From NCBI GenBank assembly GCA_026936335.1, contig JAPMXV010000038.1, positions 62,001 through 126,000 of the forward strand: a stretch of 64,000 nt of DNA, in the 5' to 3' direction. This DNA comes from Mantamonas sphyraenae STR306. Its lineage: Eukaryota > Protista > CRuMs. Shown here piece by piece: positions 49,483-56,878 of the stretch; position 1 is the stretch's first letter; each line of letters starts with the position of its first letter. The notes beneath the pieces are model-generated. The model was not told where the DNA came from. It did not search any database and saw only the letters and a program-made list of their open reading frames with translations. The position numbers and the translations under genes were made by a program.

Positions 49483-50551
49483 TCATTCCCCACGATGCGA
49501 CCCTCCCACACTTTGTCGCTCCTCCCACTCATTCAACATGCGATCCAATTCCTCCTCCGTGTTGACTCCATCCATGAGTCGATCAAACTCGTCCATGGCA
49601 TCCCGAGACGGCGCCGACGTGTGGATCGTCCGTGTCTTGCGTGTGTCCCGTCCCTCCATTTCATACACCTCCTCCTCCTCCTCCTCCTCATGGCCCTGCT
49701 GATCATGATGATCATGATGATGACGATGGTGATGACGTTGTTGTGTGTGCACAGCCCTGCGAGCGGTCACCGACACGGCGCCGTGGCCCATGGATGCACT
49801 TCGATGCCTCTCCTCATACAACATGCGCTTGTCCACCTTAAAGGTGCCCATGACGCCCTCCAACACCTGCGAGCCACGTCGTTGCAACGTGCGGATGCCC
49901 TGCGAGCCCAGATTGTACACCTGTGCCTTGGCTTGCTCCTGGGCACGCACCACGGTCTCGTCAATCAGCGGCTCCAACTGTTCGATGTGCGGTTCCACAA
50001 AGTTGCGGTACAGTGTGGCTGCCCCACGCGTCTGCGGCAGCAGCATCCACAACACAAACACAAACTTCAACTCCAGGTAGAACGGGAACCAGTAGAACAC
50101 AATGTCCATCCAAAACTCCATAAAGCCAAACAACGAGTACACAACCCTGTGGGAGTGGAAAGAGGGGGATGAGGGCGGGGGAGGGGGGTATGGGATGCGT
50201 TGTGTTTGATGCGTTTGCCAACGTTGTTGGGTGTGCGTGTGTGTGTGTGTGTGTGTTTCGCATGCCACGTCGTCGTGTGAGCGATGACGTCGAAAGTCGT
50301 TGACCCGCCGCCGCCGGAATTGGCTCCCCCACTTTCTTCTGTGTGCCCAGCGCCCCTGACTGTGGGTGCCTCGTACTACGATCCATCCGCATTTGGGTTT
50401 CCCATCATCAAACTCACCAATATGTCAGCCACTGGTGCTGCTCATGCTGATCCCGCAGCCGGATGGCTTTGTACGACTGCAGCGCCGGGTACAGAAATCC
50501 CACCGTGTTCAGGAACGGTTTGGTCACAAACGTGGGCAGAAACGACAGCAT
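49483..50551 (-). CDS. REEP/HVA22 (TB2/DP1) family ER-shaping protein; intron 50147-50417
   Basis: GFLYPALQSYKAI...QWLTYW|VVYSLF..E...YWFPFYLELKFVFVLWMLLPQTRGAATLY. Confidence 0.9.
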
Positions 50552-50707
50552 TTACAAACCCCTTTGCTTTGCGTGTCTATGTGTGTGTATGTGTGTGCTG
50601 TGTGTGTGTTTGTGTGTGTGTGTGTGCCTGCCGTTCCCACCGAATTCACTCTCGCTCTGGCTGCGCCGGCGCCGCCATCCCCCGGGCACCCCACCCCTCC
50701 CCTCCGC

Positions 50708-51874
50708 ATGTCATTGTCACTGAACGATCGCAGCAACCCGTTGTCCAAAGACCAACGACCCACATTCTACGACACACAGGAGCTGGAATGTGTCAAGGTG
50801 CTGGAGGACAATTGGGAGGCCATCCTGGAGGAGTTCCACGCGGTTTGCGAACAAAACCTCATTGAATGGCCGGAAAAGGAACTGTTCAACCAAATTGTGC
50901 AAAGGAATGGTTCCTCCCCGTCCTCCTCCTCCTCCTCCTCCTCCTCTTCTTCTGTGGAGCAGGTGGATGATGATGAAGAGGCCAAGCAAAGACGACGCAA
51001 CCGGAACATCCGTCGCAAACGTGGCAAGGGTTGGAACGTGTACGGTCTCTATGCGTTTGGGGGCAAGAATGAGGAGAACTGTGCACGGTGTCCCGTGACC
51101 ACACGCTGTTTGGATGCCCTGCCCAATGTCAGCACGGCAGCGTTCTCCCTCCTGGAACCCGGGTCACACATCACCCCGCACACGGGCTACGAGGGCTACT
51201 CCAACTATGTCTTCCGGTGTCATTTGGGTCTTATCATCCCAGACGAGGACAAGGTGTGGATGAGTCGCCAGGAGGCCGAACAGAGTCTCGGAGTCGATCC
51301 GTTCTACGGCACCGGCATCCGCTCACGCTGCAACTACGTCCATCGGGCTTCTTCTTCCTCTTCCTCTTCCACGTCGGACGACGACAACGACAACGACAAC
51401 GACGACCACTTTGCCGAGTTCAACTCCAGCCACTATGCGGCCTTGGGTGAGGATGAGATGTTGGAGAGGCAATCGAATGTGGAGGAGGTGGGCTTGCCCT
51501 ATGTGGGTCTCCGCGTGGCGTCGGACGTTGCCACCTGGCAGCAGGGCAAGTGTTTTGTGTTTGACGACTCCCACCTGCACGAAGCATGGAACTTTACGGA
51601 ACAGCCCCGCCTGGTGCTGCTCATCGACTTTGAACGACCCTCGCACTTTCTCTACGGCGACGACGCCTACGAGCGGGGCGAGGTCGACGAGGCCCGCTCC
51701 GTCCAGGACGCACAGAACACACAGGAGGAAAACCCGTTTGCCAAGAAGCGCAAGGGGCGTCTCTACCTCAACGACCTCGTCACTCAGTTTGGGTACGAGC
51801 TCATGGACAAGCAACCGGGGCCCCAACAACAACCCCAGCAGGAGGACGACGACGAGCAATCACCATCCCAATAA
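50708..51874 (+). CDS. Aspartyl/asparaginyl beta-hydroxylase-family Fe/2-OG dioxygenase
   Basis: LEDNWEAILEEF, CPVT, FSLLEPGSHITPHTG, RCHLGL, FVFDDSHLHEAWN, RLVLLIDF. Confidence 0.88.
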   Translation: MSLSLNDRSNPLSKDQRPTFYDTQELECVKVLEDNWEAILEEFHAVCEQNLIEWPEKELFNQIVQRNGSSPSSSSSSSSSSSVEQVDDDEEAKQRRRNRNIRRKRGKGWNVYGLYAFGGKNEENCARCPVTTRCLDALPNVSTAAFSLLEPGSHITPHTGYEGYSNYVFRCHLGLIIPDEDKVWMSRQEAEQSLGVDPFYGTGIRSRCNYVHRASSSSSSSTSDDDNDNDNDDHFAEFNSSHYAALGEDEMLERQSNVEEVGLPYVGLRVASDVATWQQGKCFVFDDSHLHEAWNFTEQPRLVLLIDFERPSHFLYGDDAYERGEVDEARSVQDAQNTQEENPFAKKRKGRLYLNDLVTQFGYELMDKQPGPQQQPQQEDDDEQSPSQ

Positions 51875-51933: not shown

Positions 51934-52493
51934 TTAGTCATCATCGTCATCATCATCATCCTGAAACATGCGGGTTTGCTCGAGGAGGGGAAGAGCCTCG
52001 GGCACGGCAAGTGCGCCTGCAAACACGCCGCCCACAGCCAGAATGGAACCCAGGGTGAGGCCAGACACGCCGCCATTCTCATAAAAGGGTCCCTCCCAAC
52101 CCGCTCGTTCGGACAGCACGATGCCCGCCCGCAGGCCGCTTGTGTGCGGGTCGGGAAACACTGTGCGTCGTTGTCCAGCCTCCACCGACGCCTCCTCCGC
52201 CGACGCCGCCATACGCGTTGTCGACGTCGACACCATCTGTGTACGCATCACCACACGCGACGTCACACCCACAGATGTCGACACACCTGCCAATCCCAAT
52301 CGCTGTGGTCGTCCCCACTGGGTCAGTGTTGCTTTTTGGGAAGAGGGCTGCTCACACAAACCCACTTCCTCCACCTCCCACCTCTCTCCCCACCCACCCC
52401 CTTCCCCCCCCCCCCGCTCACACCCTTCTCTTTCTCCCAAAACCCCCACTTTCACATGCACGAGTTGAGTTGTCATCCACTCACCGTTGCCAT
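51934..52493 (-). CDS. EMRE/SMDT1-like single-pass mitochondrial protein (125 aa); intron 52303-52484
   Basis: Exon 1 ATG GCA ACG|GTGAGT, branch CACTGAC, CACAG acceptor; presequence-like N-terminus, one hydrophobic helix, C-terminus LLEQTRMFQDDDDDDDD*. Confidence 0.65.
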
Positions 52494-52544
52494 TGCCTGT
52501 TACAAGCTGTTCGATTTGGCGCGCCAGCGCCAGCGGGGGCAGAG

Positions 52545-53255
52545 ATGGCCCCGCCTCCACGACGCAAAACCAAGGGCTGGTCGCAGCCACCGTACGCACG
52601 CAAGGAAAACGCAGCAAGGGAGGACAATGGGATGGCACTGGCACAACGTGGGGCGTGGTCAGTGCGGTCGAGGTGGGTGTGGTGGGGTCTGGGTCTGAGC
52701 CTTTGGGTGCTTCTGGTCATTCTCAGCCACACCAACGCCAACCACCTGTCCACCTGCTCCCTTAACTTTATGCCCCTCATTGCCACCTACATTGGATCCC
52801 TCTCCTGGCTGGGCATGGGCATCCTCGTCGCCCTCGTCGATGAAACCGGCGCCGACGTGACGGTGGGCTTCGAGTCTGAGTTTGGCTCAGTGCACGTGGA
52901 TGAGGAAACAGACGTGCATCCACTGGTCAAGCGAACCACCCAACTCCTGCTCTTTGTTCATACCCTTCTCTGTCTCTTTGCCATCATCAGTGTCAGTGTG
53001 ACCCCAACCCATTGCCAACGCACCCTCCTGGCAACCTCCCAATGGTTCTGGCAGGGTTGGTCCTTTGTCATCCTCATCACCATATGGCTGTGTGTCATCA
53101 CCCTTGTCTACACACTCGCCCTGTGTCTGGAACTGTCCCAGGCCGCCCCATCCGTGGTGGCTCCCCACCACCACGCTTCCCCCACCTCCTCCCGCTCTTC
53201 ATCGCCCTCTACCCTCTTTGCGCCCCACAAGGACCTCCCATCCTCCGAATCATGA
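52545..53255 (+). CDS. Hypothetical 4-TM membrane protein
   Basis: Four hydrophobic segments; divergent from the EMRE-like gene. Confidence 0.65.
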   Translation: MAPPPRRKTKGWSQPPYARKENAAREDNGMALAQRGAWSVRSRWVWWGLGLSLWVLLVILSHTNANHLSTCSLNFMPLIATYIGSLSWLGMGILVALVDETGADVTVGFESEFGSVHVDEETDVHPLVKRTTQLLLFVHTLLCLFAIISVSVTPTHCQRTLLATSQWFWQGWSFVILITIWLCVITLVYTLALCLELSQAAPSVVAPHHHASPTSSRSSSPSTLFAPHKDLPSSES

Positions 53256-53427: not shown

Positions 53428-54745
53428 ATGGTGGTCGCCATGTCTGCTGCCCCACCGGCGGCCATACCCGCCGTGTTGCCCGACGACGCACCTCCGTCCA
53501 CCCTTCCCTTCTGGATGCAAACCCTCGTTTCCGGTGGCGTGGCTGGCATGATTGCCAAAACGGCCGTTGCCCCCTTTGATCGCCTCAAAATCCTCAGCCA
53601 GGTCCGTCCTCCCGGCCCCCTTTTTCCGAACATTTTGCCTCCGATTGCCTCCGAAATCAAGACGACCGCGCATCCCCGCCCCCACACACGCGGCCCCCCG
53701 CACCACACACATACGCAACGCAAACAGGTGCATGCACACACAGTCGACACTGACACTGCGTTTGGGTGCTGCCCGTTTGCCATGTGCCTTTACAGGCTGG
53801 CTCCCAACACTACCACTTTACAGGCTTGCGCAGCTTCGCCGTCCAGGTTGTGGCTCGCGAAGGCGTCCCGTCCCTGTGGAAGGGCAACAGCGCCACCCTC
53901 GTCCGCATTTTCCCCTATGCGGCTGTACAGTTTACTGCCTACGAGCAAACCCGACTTGTACGTGAGCAGGCAGCAGCAGCAGCAGCAGCAGCACACACAC
54001 CCGTGAACCAACCCAGAAGTGCACATGCTGACACGGCCTCGCCCCCCCCCCCCCGCGCCCCGCTTCCCGGGTTCACACACATTCCCACCATGTGCCCCCC
54101 ACACCATAGCTTTTGCGACGCAACAGTCCAGACATGGCAGTGGATGCCAAGTTCACACCGTTGGAAAACATGATGGCAGGGTCGACGGCGGGCGCCTGCG
54201 CGGTGATCTCCACCTACCCGTTGGACCTCGTGCGCTCTCGCCTGGCCTTCCAGGTGTCCCACCGACACTACGAGAGTGTGGGACACGCCATCCGACGGAT
54301 CTACGCCGAGGGTGGTATGCGTGAATTGTACCGTGGCGTGGGTCCCACGCTGATTGGCATCGTCCCCTACGGCGGCGTCAACTTTTCCGCCTACGAGTTC
54401 CTCAAGGGCCTGTTTGCAGACAACACGGGCAACAAGGATGGTGACACGTCCAGTCTGCCCTGGTACGCCAAGCTCATCTGCGGTGGTCTTGCAGGTGCCA
54501 CGGGTCAGACCGTCACGTACCCGTTGGACACCGTACGCAGGCGCATGCAACTCAGCTCCCACCCGGAGAGTGCCCATTTGCCCAACTACAAGAACAGTTG
54601 GCACACCCTCACCACCGTCTTTCGTCATGAGGGCATCCGTGGTCTCTACAAGGGTCTCACCATCAACTACTGGCGCGTCACCCCGTCCGTGGGCATTAGT
54701 TTCATGGTGTATGAGCTCGTCAAGGATGTTGTGGCCAGTGTGTGA
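53428..54745 (+). CDS. Mitochondrial carrier, CoA-transporter (SLC25A16/A42, Leu5) type; introns 53602-53795, 53958-54109
   Basis: Three PxDxx[KR] motifs (APFDRLK, YPLDLVR, YPLDTVRRRMQ); LWKGNSATLVRIFPYAAVQF. Confidence 0.9.
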
Positions 54746-54884: not shown

Positions 54885-55523
54885 ATGTCCTCCACGCGAG
54901 CCAAACGCACGCGAAGTGATATGATGCAAGAGACACCTGAGGAGGACAGGGAGCTGGACGTCGACCCACATCACGCCAAGCGCGCGTACGTTCTCCACCC
55001 TCTCCAGCTTGCATCCGTGCACTTTCCCCTCCAGCACACACACACGCCCTTTCCTGCGTGTCTGATGCCCATGTCCACCCATTCACATTCACCCCACATG
55101 TGCTCGCCGGCCCCTGTACCCCGCAGGAAACCCTCCCAGCTGGCCGACATTGCCGCTCGTGTCGCAAGCAACGCCGCTTCCCGCGCCGCTTCCTCCGCTT
55201 CCTCCACCTCCACCTCCACTCCTCTGCCAAGGAGGCAGCCATTGCGGCTGCCCGTGCAGCTGCAGCTGCCCGTGCCAAAGAGCTTGCAGCTGCCAAGGCA
55301 CAGCCCACAGCGCCGCCCAAACACAAGACACTCAGCTCCGCCTCTTCCGGCACGTTCATCCCGGCCCCGCTGCGTCTCGACGCCCAAGGACGCGAGATTG
55401 ACGAGCAGGGCAACCTCATCAAGACAAAGGTGCGCTCAGTGAGCACCCTCAAGGCCAACAAGGACTTTGAGAAGCGTCAGCGCTTCGAGCAGATGCTGAA
55501 GGAGGTCACCGAGCTTGCCTCGG

Positions 55524-55554
<31 letters not shown>

Positions 55555-56878
55555 TGGCAAGCGAACCAACAACCATGGCGACGACGAGGGAGCCACAGCG
55601 GGCGATCTCAAGAGTCAACCCTTCTATGACCCGACAGTGGGTGCGGGCAAGACGCCAGGTGGGCGTCGCGGCCGGCGCGATTTCCACTTTGTGGAGAAGG
55701 GCACGTTTGTGCGCAAGGCTGAGAACCTGCGGCACAAGGAACAGCTCAAGGAGATTCTAGAGATGCAGGCGGAGGAAAAGGCAAGGCGCAAGGAGCAGGG
55801 ATTGGATGACGACGAGGAGGAGGACCACGTGTTTGATCTGCTGCTTGCTCGCAAGCTCCATTCCAAACCAAAGGCACCCGAGGTCGAATGGTGGGATGCC
55901 CCACTGTTGCCCAGCAAGACCTACGACGATGTCATCCTACCCAACGACCTGCAAACCTCCTCCTCCTCCTCATCCTCCTCGATGGATGTGGATGTGGACA
56001 CACGCTCCTGGGAACAGATGTTGGACGACGTCACCGTGCAGTTGCGCCAGGGCAAGATCACACACCTGGTGGAACACCCTGTGCCCATCGAACCGCCCAT
56101 GATGGATGAACCGGTGGTGCGGCAGCCGTTGATGCTCACCAAAGCAGAGAGCAAGAAGCTGCGTCGACGCAGGCGCATGGAAAAGGAGAGGCTGAAGCAG
56201 GAGATGCAAAAGATGAATCTGTTGGCACCCACAGGCGACAAGCTCAAGGTGTCCAACATGATGCGTGTGTTGGGCGAGGAGGCGGTGATGGCCCCGTCAC
56301 AGATTGAAGCCAAGGCCAGGGCTGCCGAGAAGTACAGGCTCACACAGCATCTGCAGAACAACGAGTCACGCAAACTGTCCAAAGAGGCACGCAGGGAGGC
56401 CAATCTGGCCAAGTTGTTGCGTGACCAGGACGCAGGCACAAAGGTGGCCCTGTTTCGTGTGGAACGCGTCAACCACAAGAAACACTACGCAAAACTCAAC
56501 ATCAACGCCCAACAGAACAGACTCACCGGCGCATGTGTATGCCTCCCCGACTTTGCCATCCTCGTCGTCGAGGGCAACACCAAGCCCCGCGAACGGTACA
56601 AGAAGCTCGTCCTGCGCCGCATGAAATGGAACGAATTCCTCGACGAGGAACAGGCTGCCGAGGATGAACAGAGCAAGGAACAGGGTCGCCCTGCACGCAC
56701 CCTGGCTCCAAACTCTGCACAGCTCATCTGGGAGGGCGTCCTTCAGAAGCCAGCCTTTTCCAACTGGCGCATCGAATCCTTCCCCACAGACATTGCTGGC
56801 CGTGCCTTTTTCGAGCAGCATGGCGTGCCCCAGTACTTTGACATGTGCAAAAAGGCTGCCTCCCTGACAAAGTCCTGA
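54885..56878 (+). CDS. PRPF3: U4/U6 snRNP protein Prp3; intron ~54986-55127; frame break near 55219
   Basis: LRLDAQGREID, STLKAN, PEVEWWD, ITHLVEHPVPIEPP, LTKAE.KKLRRRRR, KVSNMMRVLG, NAQQNRLTG, YKKLVLRRMKW. Confidence 0.93.

What the first reader, a model, noticed from the sequence alone, without database searches (positions are those of the whole stretch)
51934..52493. Hidden EMRE-like gene (mitochondrial calcium uniporter regulator) in a flagellate
Seen: a 3-codon first exon plus a canonical intron give MATRLGLAGVSTSVGVTSRVVMRTQMVSTSTTRMAAS...GSILAVGGVFAGALAVPEALPLLEQTRMFQDDDDDDDD* (125 aa). The first ~37 residues are Arg/Ser/Thr-rich with no acidic residues, followed by one hydrophobic helix and a poly-Asp end. 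Established: EMRE has this layout, and its recalled human C-terminus YVGTLISKNFAALLEEHDIFVPEDDDDDD aligns without gaps (G.L.......LLE....F...DDDD). EMRE is known mainly from animals, with scattered homologs in unicellular opisthokonts and some fungi. Inference: this may be a divergent EMRE implying an animal-like MCU-EMRE-MICU complex; if the host is outside Opisthokonta it would move the origin earlier. Caveats: the PxP motif lies further from the helix (FPDP), and GxxxS appears only as an offset GVFAG.
Basis: partly seen in the sequence, partly recalled or inferred. Interest (0 to 1): 0.85.

Follow-up and report, generated by a model that had tools for sequence, protein, structure and literature searches.

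The report
Possible EMRE-like protein in Mantamonas
A deep-branching marine flagellate expresses a small gene built like EMRE, the helper subunit of the mitochondrial calcium channel known only from animals, their relatives and a few fungi; the likeness is better than chance but too weak to prove kinship, and if real it would push EMRE's origin much further back.

Summary
The gene is real. An RNA-derived contig covers exon 2 and joins it to the 3-codon exon 1 exactly as proposed, and codon usage favours this frame. The genome matches Mantamonas sphyraenae (CRuMs, outside Amorphea) and encodes one MCU, a MICU1 orthologue and a second MICU-like protein. The 125-aa product has a presequence-like start, one hydrophobic helix and a D8 end. 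EMRE is its only Pfam hit (E 0.004-0.04, below cut-off) and the top PDB hit for its last 52 residues, but both vanish without the tail. In the tail-fixed gapless register it keeps G66, L67, G77, G81, A82, L92, E93, F98 (P about 0.002 against segment shuffles; gapped tests only 0.045-0.13) and loses S85, K86, A89, E94, P60, P100. The host MCU has an animal-like EMRE-facing helix but gate residues (G290, F294) that free human MCU from EMRE, and MICU1 lacks the KKKKR patch. Verdict: about 55% a remote EMRE homologue, more likely a non-essential accessory than an essential activator; not filed as a family member. No homologue was found anywhere. The scan had not noted EMRE before; it had noted the MCU-MICU1 linkage.

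The parts
52485..52493 (-). Exon 1 coding part (Met-Ala-Thr)
   Evidence: Sequence; RNA-derived contig of run X3 joins 52302 to this exon
52303..52484 (-). 182-nt GT-AG intron with CTGAC branch-like word; an in-frame upstream AG at 52318 exists but the RNA contig uses 52303
   Evidence: no X3 depth in bin 52356-52509
51934..52302 (-). Exon 2, 122 codons plus TAA
   Evidence: best of six frames by host codon model; X3 contig, depth 174
52201..52302 (-). Rest of the presequence-like N-terminus (residues 4-37): Arg/Ser/Thr-rich, no acidic residues
   Evidence: host MCU and MICU starts are also acid-free but carry more Arg/Lys; targeting inferred, not shown
52147..52161 (-). VFPDP, the only PxP; about 30 residues before the helix-start Gly instead of 6-8
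   Evidence: MAFFT aligns it to the EMRE PxP only with a 23-residue insertion
52003..52062 (-). Single Gly/Ala-rich hydrophobic helix; matches EMRE G66, L67, V75, G77, G81, A82 without gaps, Val at the S85 position
51964..52002 (-). Post-helix segment: matches EMRE L92, E93, F98; Pro at K86 and at position 90, Leu at invariant A89, Gln at invariant E94
51937..51960 (-). C-terminal D8 tail; six or more Asp directly before a stop occur at only 3 places in the genome

Best explanation
A real, spliced, expressed gene for a small single-pass protein (shown). It is imported into mitochondria and sits in the inner membrane with its N-terminus in the matrix and its Asp tail in the intermembrane space (inferred from composition and by analogy with EMRE). 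It is a remote homologue of EMRE (inferred): its Gly-rich helix (G77/G81 face) packs against TM1 of the host's single MCU, and the acidic tail holds a MICU protein electrostatically near the pore. Unlike animal EMRE it is probably not needed to open the channel, because the host MCU carries gate residues that make human MCU EMRE-independent. It would be an accessory, MICU-retaining or stabilising subunit, a state from which strict EMRE dependence later arose in opisthokonts.
For: Gene and splice. EMRE (PF10161) is the only one of 24,736 Pfam families hit (E 0.039; 0.0042 for the last 52 aa); beetle and human EMRE are the top two PDB hits for the last 52 aa (E 0.25, 0.67). Gapless match at eight positions conserved in 82-100% of 139 animal EMREs. 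Tail-free 33-mer: best of 4,575 hydrophobic windows and among the best 2 of 183,000 six-frame windows of host DNA. With V99/P100 and 7 registers allowed: P about 0.002 against helix-preserving shuffles, and none of about 1,680 overlapping host helix decoys given an artificial D8 tail reaches the score. Asp6+stop is rare in the genome. MCU and MICU1 present. MCU TM1 has L240, A241, G244, F247, G248 like 106 animal MCUs and unlike 13 amoebozoan-type MCUs; L240, A241, A244, G248 form the EMRE contact (PMC7764451). Host G290 and F294 correspond to V290G (some EMRE-free activity) and A294F (EMRE-free activity) in human MCU.
Against: Without the tail no Pfam, PDB, HMMER or hhalign match. With the tail fixed, gapped tests give only P 0.045 (HMMER) and 0.13 (hhalign). 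Score 7-14 bits against 51 or more for true members. S85, K86, A89, E94, P60, P100 lost, and two prolines fall in EMRE's helix extension. Host MCU lacks R297, which helps bind EMRE in humans. Host MICU1 has no KKKKR before its first conserved helix (its role). No homologue in 5.8 billion or 1.84 billion proteins, JGI metagenomes or the ESM Atlas, so no bridging sequences. Dictyostelium, which branches between CRuMs and opisthokonts, has no EMRE, so loss there must be assumed. Plant MCUs may share the small-residue TM1 face (my recall, untested), which would make it non-diagnostic.
Confidence: 0.45

Rival explanations
1. An unrelated small mitochondrial inner-membrane protein (for example a lineage-specific respiratory-chain or ATP-synthase accessory subunit or assembly factor) whose Asp run is one of this genome's many low-complexity tracts; the EMRE likeness is convergence or chance.
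For: All database signal depends on the tail; gapped tests are weak; half of EMRE's near-invariant residues are lost; neighbouring proteins also carry Asp, Ser and Glu runs; host MCU gate looks EMRE-independent and MICU1 lacks the basic patch; the finding was picked out of a very large scan, so a P of 0.002 is not decisive.
Against: No other family is hit at all; the register-fixed match beats all host decoys; presequence, helix, 13-residue spacer and tail sit in EMRE's order and spacing; Asp6+stop is rare. A recalled likeness to COX7c/yeast Cox8 was not supported by Pfam or PDB searches.
Confidence: 0.38
2. A true EMRE in the animal sense: the host MCU is closed without it, as in animals and chytrids.
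For: Same sequence evidence as the best explanation; animal-like TM1 face; chytrid EMREs are also highly divergent yet essential (10.1101/2020.03.24.006015); a 6-residue spacer between PKP and the helix is tolerated in human EMRE.
Against: G290 and F294 in the host MCU; post-TM2 stretch resembles amoebozoan MCUs (Tyr-Glu, not Tyr-Pro); Gxxx[G/A/S] at 81-85, reported fully conserved in fungal EMREs, is not kept in the gapless register.
Confidence: 0.1
3. A non-mitochondrial small membrane protein (ER or other), the N-terminus being merely Ser/Thr-rich and disordered.
For: Only 4 basic residues in the first 35, fewer than the 6-7 of host MICU starts; no targeting predictor was run.
Against: No acidic residue until position 39, no N-terminal hydrophobic signal.
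Confidence: 0.06
4. Not a host gene: spurious frame, assembly error or contamination from an opisthokont.
For: No homologue found; codon score of the whole exon is at the low end of host genes.
Against: Spliced RNA contig and two DNA runs support it; it fills the gap between two host genes; no close animal or fungal match.
Confidence: 0.01

Closest known systems
EMRE / SMDT1 (Pfam PF10161 DDDD) of animals
   Same: Size class, presequence-like start, one helix, 13-residue spacer and poly-Asp end; gapless identity at G66, L67, G77 (invertebrate type), G81, A82, L92, E93, F98; partner genes MCU and MICU1 present.
   Different: S85, K86, A89, E94, N95, P76, P100 not kept; PxP about 30 residues from the helix; about 25 residues longer; far below the family cut-off (14-17 against 27 bits); host MCU gate of EMRE-independent type; MICU1 without KKKKR.
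Chytrid EMREs (Allomyces, Catenaria, Spizellomyces; PMC7423614)
   Same: Divergent, found only by iterative search; co-occur with MCU and MICU1.
   Different: They keep Gxxx[A/S/G], carry an extra domain after the acidic tail and are essential for their MCU; their sequences could not be obtained by reference here, so no direct comparison was made.
EMRE-free uniporter of Dictyostelium (MCU + MICU)
   Same: Host MCU shares the helical N-terminal domain (model matches 5z2h/5z2i, TM 0.8) and hydrophobic residue 294, Gly 278 and Tyr-Glu after TM2.
   Different: Dictyostelium and amoebozoan-type MCUs have bulky residues at 244 and lack F247; the host has the animal pattern there, and also keeps the human-type beta-grasp domain.

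Membership tests
EMRE (PF10161) | Profile score at or above the Pfam gathering cut-off (27 bits) | tested here: not met
   14.1 and 17.2 bits; lost without the tail
EMRE (PF10161) | C-terminal poly-aspartate tail | tested here: met
   D8 then stop; only 3 such ends in the genome
EMRE (PF10161) | Single transmembrane helix about 13 residues before the tail | tested here: met
   One hydrophobic peak; low-confidence model shows one long helix; gapless register
EMRE (PF10161) | Gxxx[G/A/S] at G81-S85 | tested here: not met
   G81 kept, position 85 is Val (Ser 98%, Ala 2% in 139 animal EMREs). A G77xxxG81 motif is present one turn earlier, as in 84% of those EMREs.
EMRE (PF10161) | PxP motif 6-8 residues before the helix | tested here: not met
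   Positions 58 and 60 are Phe and Glu; PDP lies 23 residues further upstream
EMRE (PF10161) | (F/L)LEE(N/H)(D/E)(L/I)FVP block before the tail | tested here: inconclusive
   L, L92, E93, F98 kept; E94, N95, V99, P100 not; register-fixed P about 0.002, gapped P 0.045-0.13
EMRE (PF10161) | Mitochondrial presequence and inner-membrane location | tested here: inconclusive
   Composition fits; location not testable
EMRE (PF10161) | Co-occurrence with MCU and MICU1 | tested here: met
   not specific, since EMRE-free lineages have both
EMRE (PF10161) | Partner MCU with small-residue TM1 contact face (240, 241, 244, 248) | tested here: met
   L, A, G, G (contact defined)
EMRE (PF10161) | Partner MICU1 with N-terminal polybasic KKKKR | tested here: not met
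   Absent from both MICU genes; a KKK loop lies about 30 residues further on in MICU1
EMRE (PF10161) | Binds MCU and is required for calcium conductance | not testable with these tools
   Needs reconstitution; no complex prediction tool available
COX7c / yeast Cox8 (PF02935) | Pfam or PDB sequence match | tested here: not met
   No hit at E up to 1-10; genome search for the family returned nothing and is uninformative

The most novel reading that the evidence does not exclude
EMRE is older than Amorphea: CRuMs keep a divergent EMRE that docks on an MCU able to open by itself, a living intermediate showing that EMRE began as an accessory or MICU tether, was lost in Dictyostelium, and became essential only in opisthokonts.
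Probability: 0.45. Interest if true: 0.85.

Novelty: new variant of a known kind. Interest (0 to 1): 0.62.

Why it matters
The largest survey (1,156 genomes, PMC7423614) places EMRE's origin in the opisthokont ancestor, and Dictyostelium's EMRE-free MCU is read as the ancestral state. CRuMs branch outside Amoebozoa plus Obazoa (PMC10492846), so a true EMRE here would make the Dictyostelium state a loss and date EMRE before Amorphea. The host MCU combines an animal-like docking face with a self-opening gate, which makes the open question 'why did MCU become dependent on EMRE?' directly testable in the existing yeast assay with three genes (this one, MCU, MICU1). No paper in the library mentions EMRE with CRuMs or a calcium uniporter with Mantamonas.

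Tried and rejected
Homologue searches with exon 2: none in 5.8 billion proteins, 1.84 billion representatives, JGI metagenomes, exact look-ups, ESM Atlas by features (best 0.84, unnamed green-algal clusters, not meaningful) or by shape (TM 0.42 or less). Genome searches with PF10161 and with an EMRE alignment found no first-look candidate, not even this locus, so they do not show absence of a better EMRE. An attempt to pull non-animal EMREs by a length trick returned only animal-type sequences; chytrid sequences are not in the paper's text supplements. The hhalign P of 1.4e-5 was rejected as evidence: it drops to 0.09 without the tail. The single-sequence model is low-confidence (pLDDT 56). 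The MCU tree puts the host on the animal side of a split from amoebozoan-type MCUs, but it is unrooted, has only these two reference groups and a long host branch, so it does not show orthology. Two allele differences in exon 2 (one silent, one Ser to Ala in the linker) are too few to test selection. A larger genomic null could not be fetched. All database searches used exon 2 or parts of it by reference; the joined search was left out. The three residues of exon 1 were added only inside local scripts to count composition and hydrophobicity.

Full report
Observation. The model is in the sequence as described: ATG at 52493, a 3-codon first exon, a 182-nt GT-AG intron (52484-52303) and a 122-codon second exon ending in eight Asp and TAA at 51934. 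It fills the gap between an aspartyl beta-hydroxylase-like gene ending at 51874 on the plus strand and a divergent plus-strand membrane-protein ORF starting near 52545-52632. A codon model trained on eight host genes ranks the proposed frame first of six; codons 38-114 score in the coding range, the presequence part lower. Run X3, labelled DNA by guess, skips a GT-AG intron at 53598-53793 that runs X1 and X2 retain, so it is RNA; its contig over 51969-52303 continues into exon 1 and not into the intron. The gene is therefore transcribed and spliced as proposed. Contigs cannot give strand or level; the strand follows from the splice signals.

Host. The genome has 25,061,354 bases in 78 contigs, the same as the Falcon assembly of Mantamonas sphyraenae (25.06 Mb, 78 contigs, 59% GC; PMC10492846). 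The four runs of study P1 fit that paper's two Illumina DNA runs and two RNA runs. [quoted passage not shown] The identification rests on these matches, not on a sequence comparison with a named record.

Likeness to EMRE, for. PF10161 is the only Pfam family hit (E 0.039 for exon 2, 0.0042 for the last 52 residues), and beetle and human EMRE are the top PDB hits for those 52 residues. I collected animal EMREs by reference (65 metagenome loci; 120 database proteins). In human numbering the candidate aligns without a gap from position 66 to the tail and keeps G66, L67, G77, G81, A82, L92, E93 and F98, each present in 82-100% of 139 EMREs. The tail-free 33-mer is the best of 4,575 hydrophobic windows and among the best 2 of 183,000 six-frame windows in 154 kb of host DNA. 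Including the unmatched V99/P100 columns and seven registers, helix-preserving shuffles reach the score with P about 0.002, and no host helix given an artificial D8 tail does (about 1,680 overlapping decoys). Six Asp before a stop occur at three places in the genome, and the other two end short frames with no hydrophobic helix.

Likeness to EMRE, against. Every database signal needs the tail. With the tail fixed, gapped comparisons give P 0.045 and 0.13. The score is a fifth or less of true members'. S85, K86, I84, A89, E94, P60 and P100 are lost, and prolines sit at 86 and 90. G81 and S85 form the motif needed to bind MCU (PMC4892889), reported as fully conserved even in chytrid EMREs; here only G77xxxG81 is present. 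The reference set is animal-only and partly selected by its C-terminal motif, which overstates invariance there. No homologue was found that could bridge the gap.

The partners. There is one MCU (G000:C20:202902-203417). Its TM1 carries L240, A241, G244, F247 and G248. All 106 animal-type MCUs retrieved have Ala/Gly/Ser at 244, Phe/Tyr at 247 and Gly at 248; all 13 amoebozoan-type MCUs (one named, Sappina) have Ile/Val/Thr at 244 and none has Phe at 247. L240, A241, A244 and G248 are the human EMRE contact (PMC7764451). The gate is the other way round: G290 and F294, where human V290G gives some and A294F gives clear EMRE-free transport, and Val at R297, which helps hold EMRE. A MICU1 orthologue lies about 16 kb from MCU and a more divergent MICU on contig 34. 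Neither has the KKKKR patch that binds EMRE's tail in humans; MICU1 has a KKK loop about 30 residues downstream that could serve, which is speculation. Transfer of human mutant effects to this MCU is an inference.

Mechanism. Shown: a spliced transcript for a small protein with a basic, acid-free start, one helix and an acidic tail. Inferred: mitochondrial inner membrane, tail in the intermembrane space; helix docking on MCU TM1 through its Gly face; tail binding a MICU; MCU conducting without it. I put remote EMRE homology at about 0.55 (0.45 accessory, 0.10 essential), an unrelated mitochondrial protein at 0.38 and other readings at 0.07.

Comparison with what is known. EMRE is reported from Holozoa and three chytrids and is placed in the opisthokont ancestor; the authors note that its short length and divergence make it hard to detect. 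This protein is built like EMRE and may work like it, but it fails three defining sequence tests (Pfam cut-off, G81xxxS85, proximal PxP), so I do not file it as a member. If orthologues or a binding test confirm it, it is the first EMRE outside opisthokonts that I can find reported.

Limits. Database searches were made with exon 2 and its parts by reference; the joined search was left out. No chytrid, choanoflagellate or plant reference sequences could be obtained, no complex could be modelled, and the M. vickermani run was laid only at 90% likeness, too strict to show an orthologue.

Verdict. Real gene, non-opisthokont host, suggestive but unproven EMRE homology, with an informative mixed signature in the partner MCU. 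Interest 0.62.

Noticed in passing
L001:1426-2573 (G000:C20, about 202.8-204.0 kb, minus): The MCU carries in tandem a human-type beta-grasp N-terminal domain (model matches 5kui/5kug, 43 columns, rmsd 0.7) and the Dictyostelium-type helical domain (5z2h/5z2i, 88 columns, TM 0.8; Pfam COR-A). Preprint 10.1101/848002 calls these two domains completely different; tandem presence suggests an ancestral two-part N-terminus with opposite losses. The model used a mixed alignment, and the beta-grasp sequence match alone is weak. Protein P0007 from an unnamed protist looks similar.
   Followed up: partly
L113 (G000:C20:185876-186505) and L001: MICU1 orthologue lies about 16 kb from MCU on the same contig and strand.
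   Followed up: yes
L014 (G000:C34:514627-515508): Second, more divergent MICU-like gene with a presequence-like start; best PDB hits are MICU proteins.
   Followed up: partly
L114 and L115 (G000:C67:267871, C62:250286): Two genes with MICU-like EF-hand N-termini fused to a mitochondrial carrier (aralar/citrin type); ordinary architecture.
   Followed up: partly
window 52140-53255 +: Head-to-head neighbour encodes a multi-pass membrane protein with no Pfam hit; likely start 52545 or 52632, only 50-140 bases from the candidate's ATG; covered by an X3 RNA contig at 52550-53114.
   Followed up: no
window 50366-51874 +: Aspartyl/asparaginyl beta-hydroxylase-domain gene interrupted by Ser- and Asp-rich low-complexity insertions; ends 60 bases from the candidate's stop.
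   Followed up: no
window 53598-53793: RNA-confirmed intron in a mitochondrial-carrier gene; PRP3 gene follows at 55058-56878.
   Followed up: no
G000:C55:81.7-82.0 kb and 90.3-90.6 kb; C13:173 kb and 223 kb: Calmodulin-like and centrin-like genes each appear as near-identical duplicated copies on one contig.
   Followed up: no
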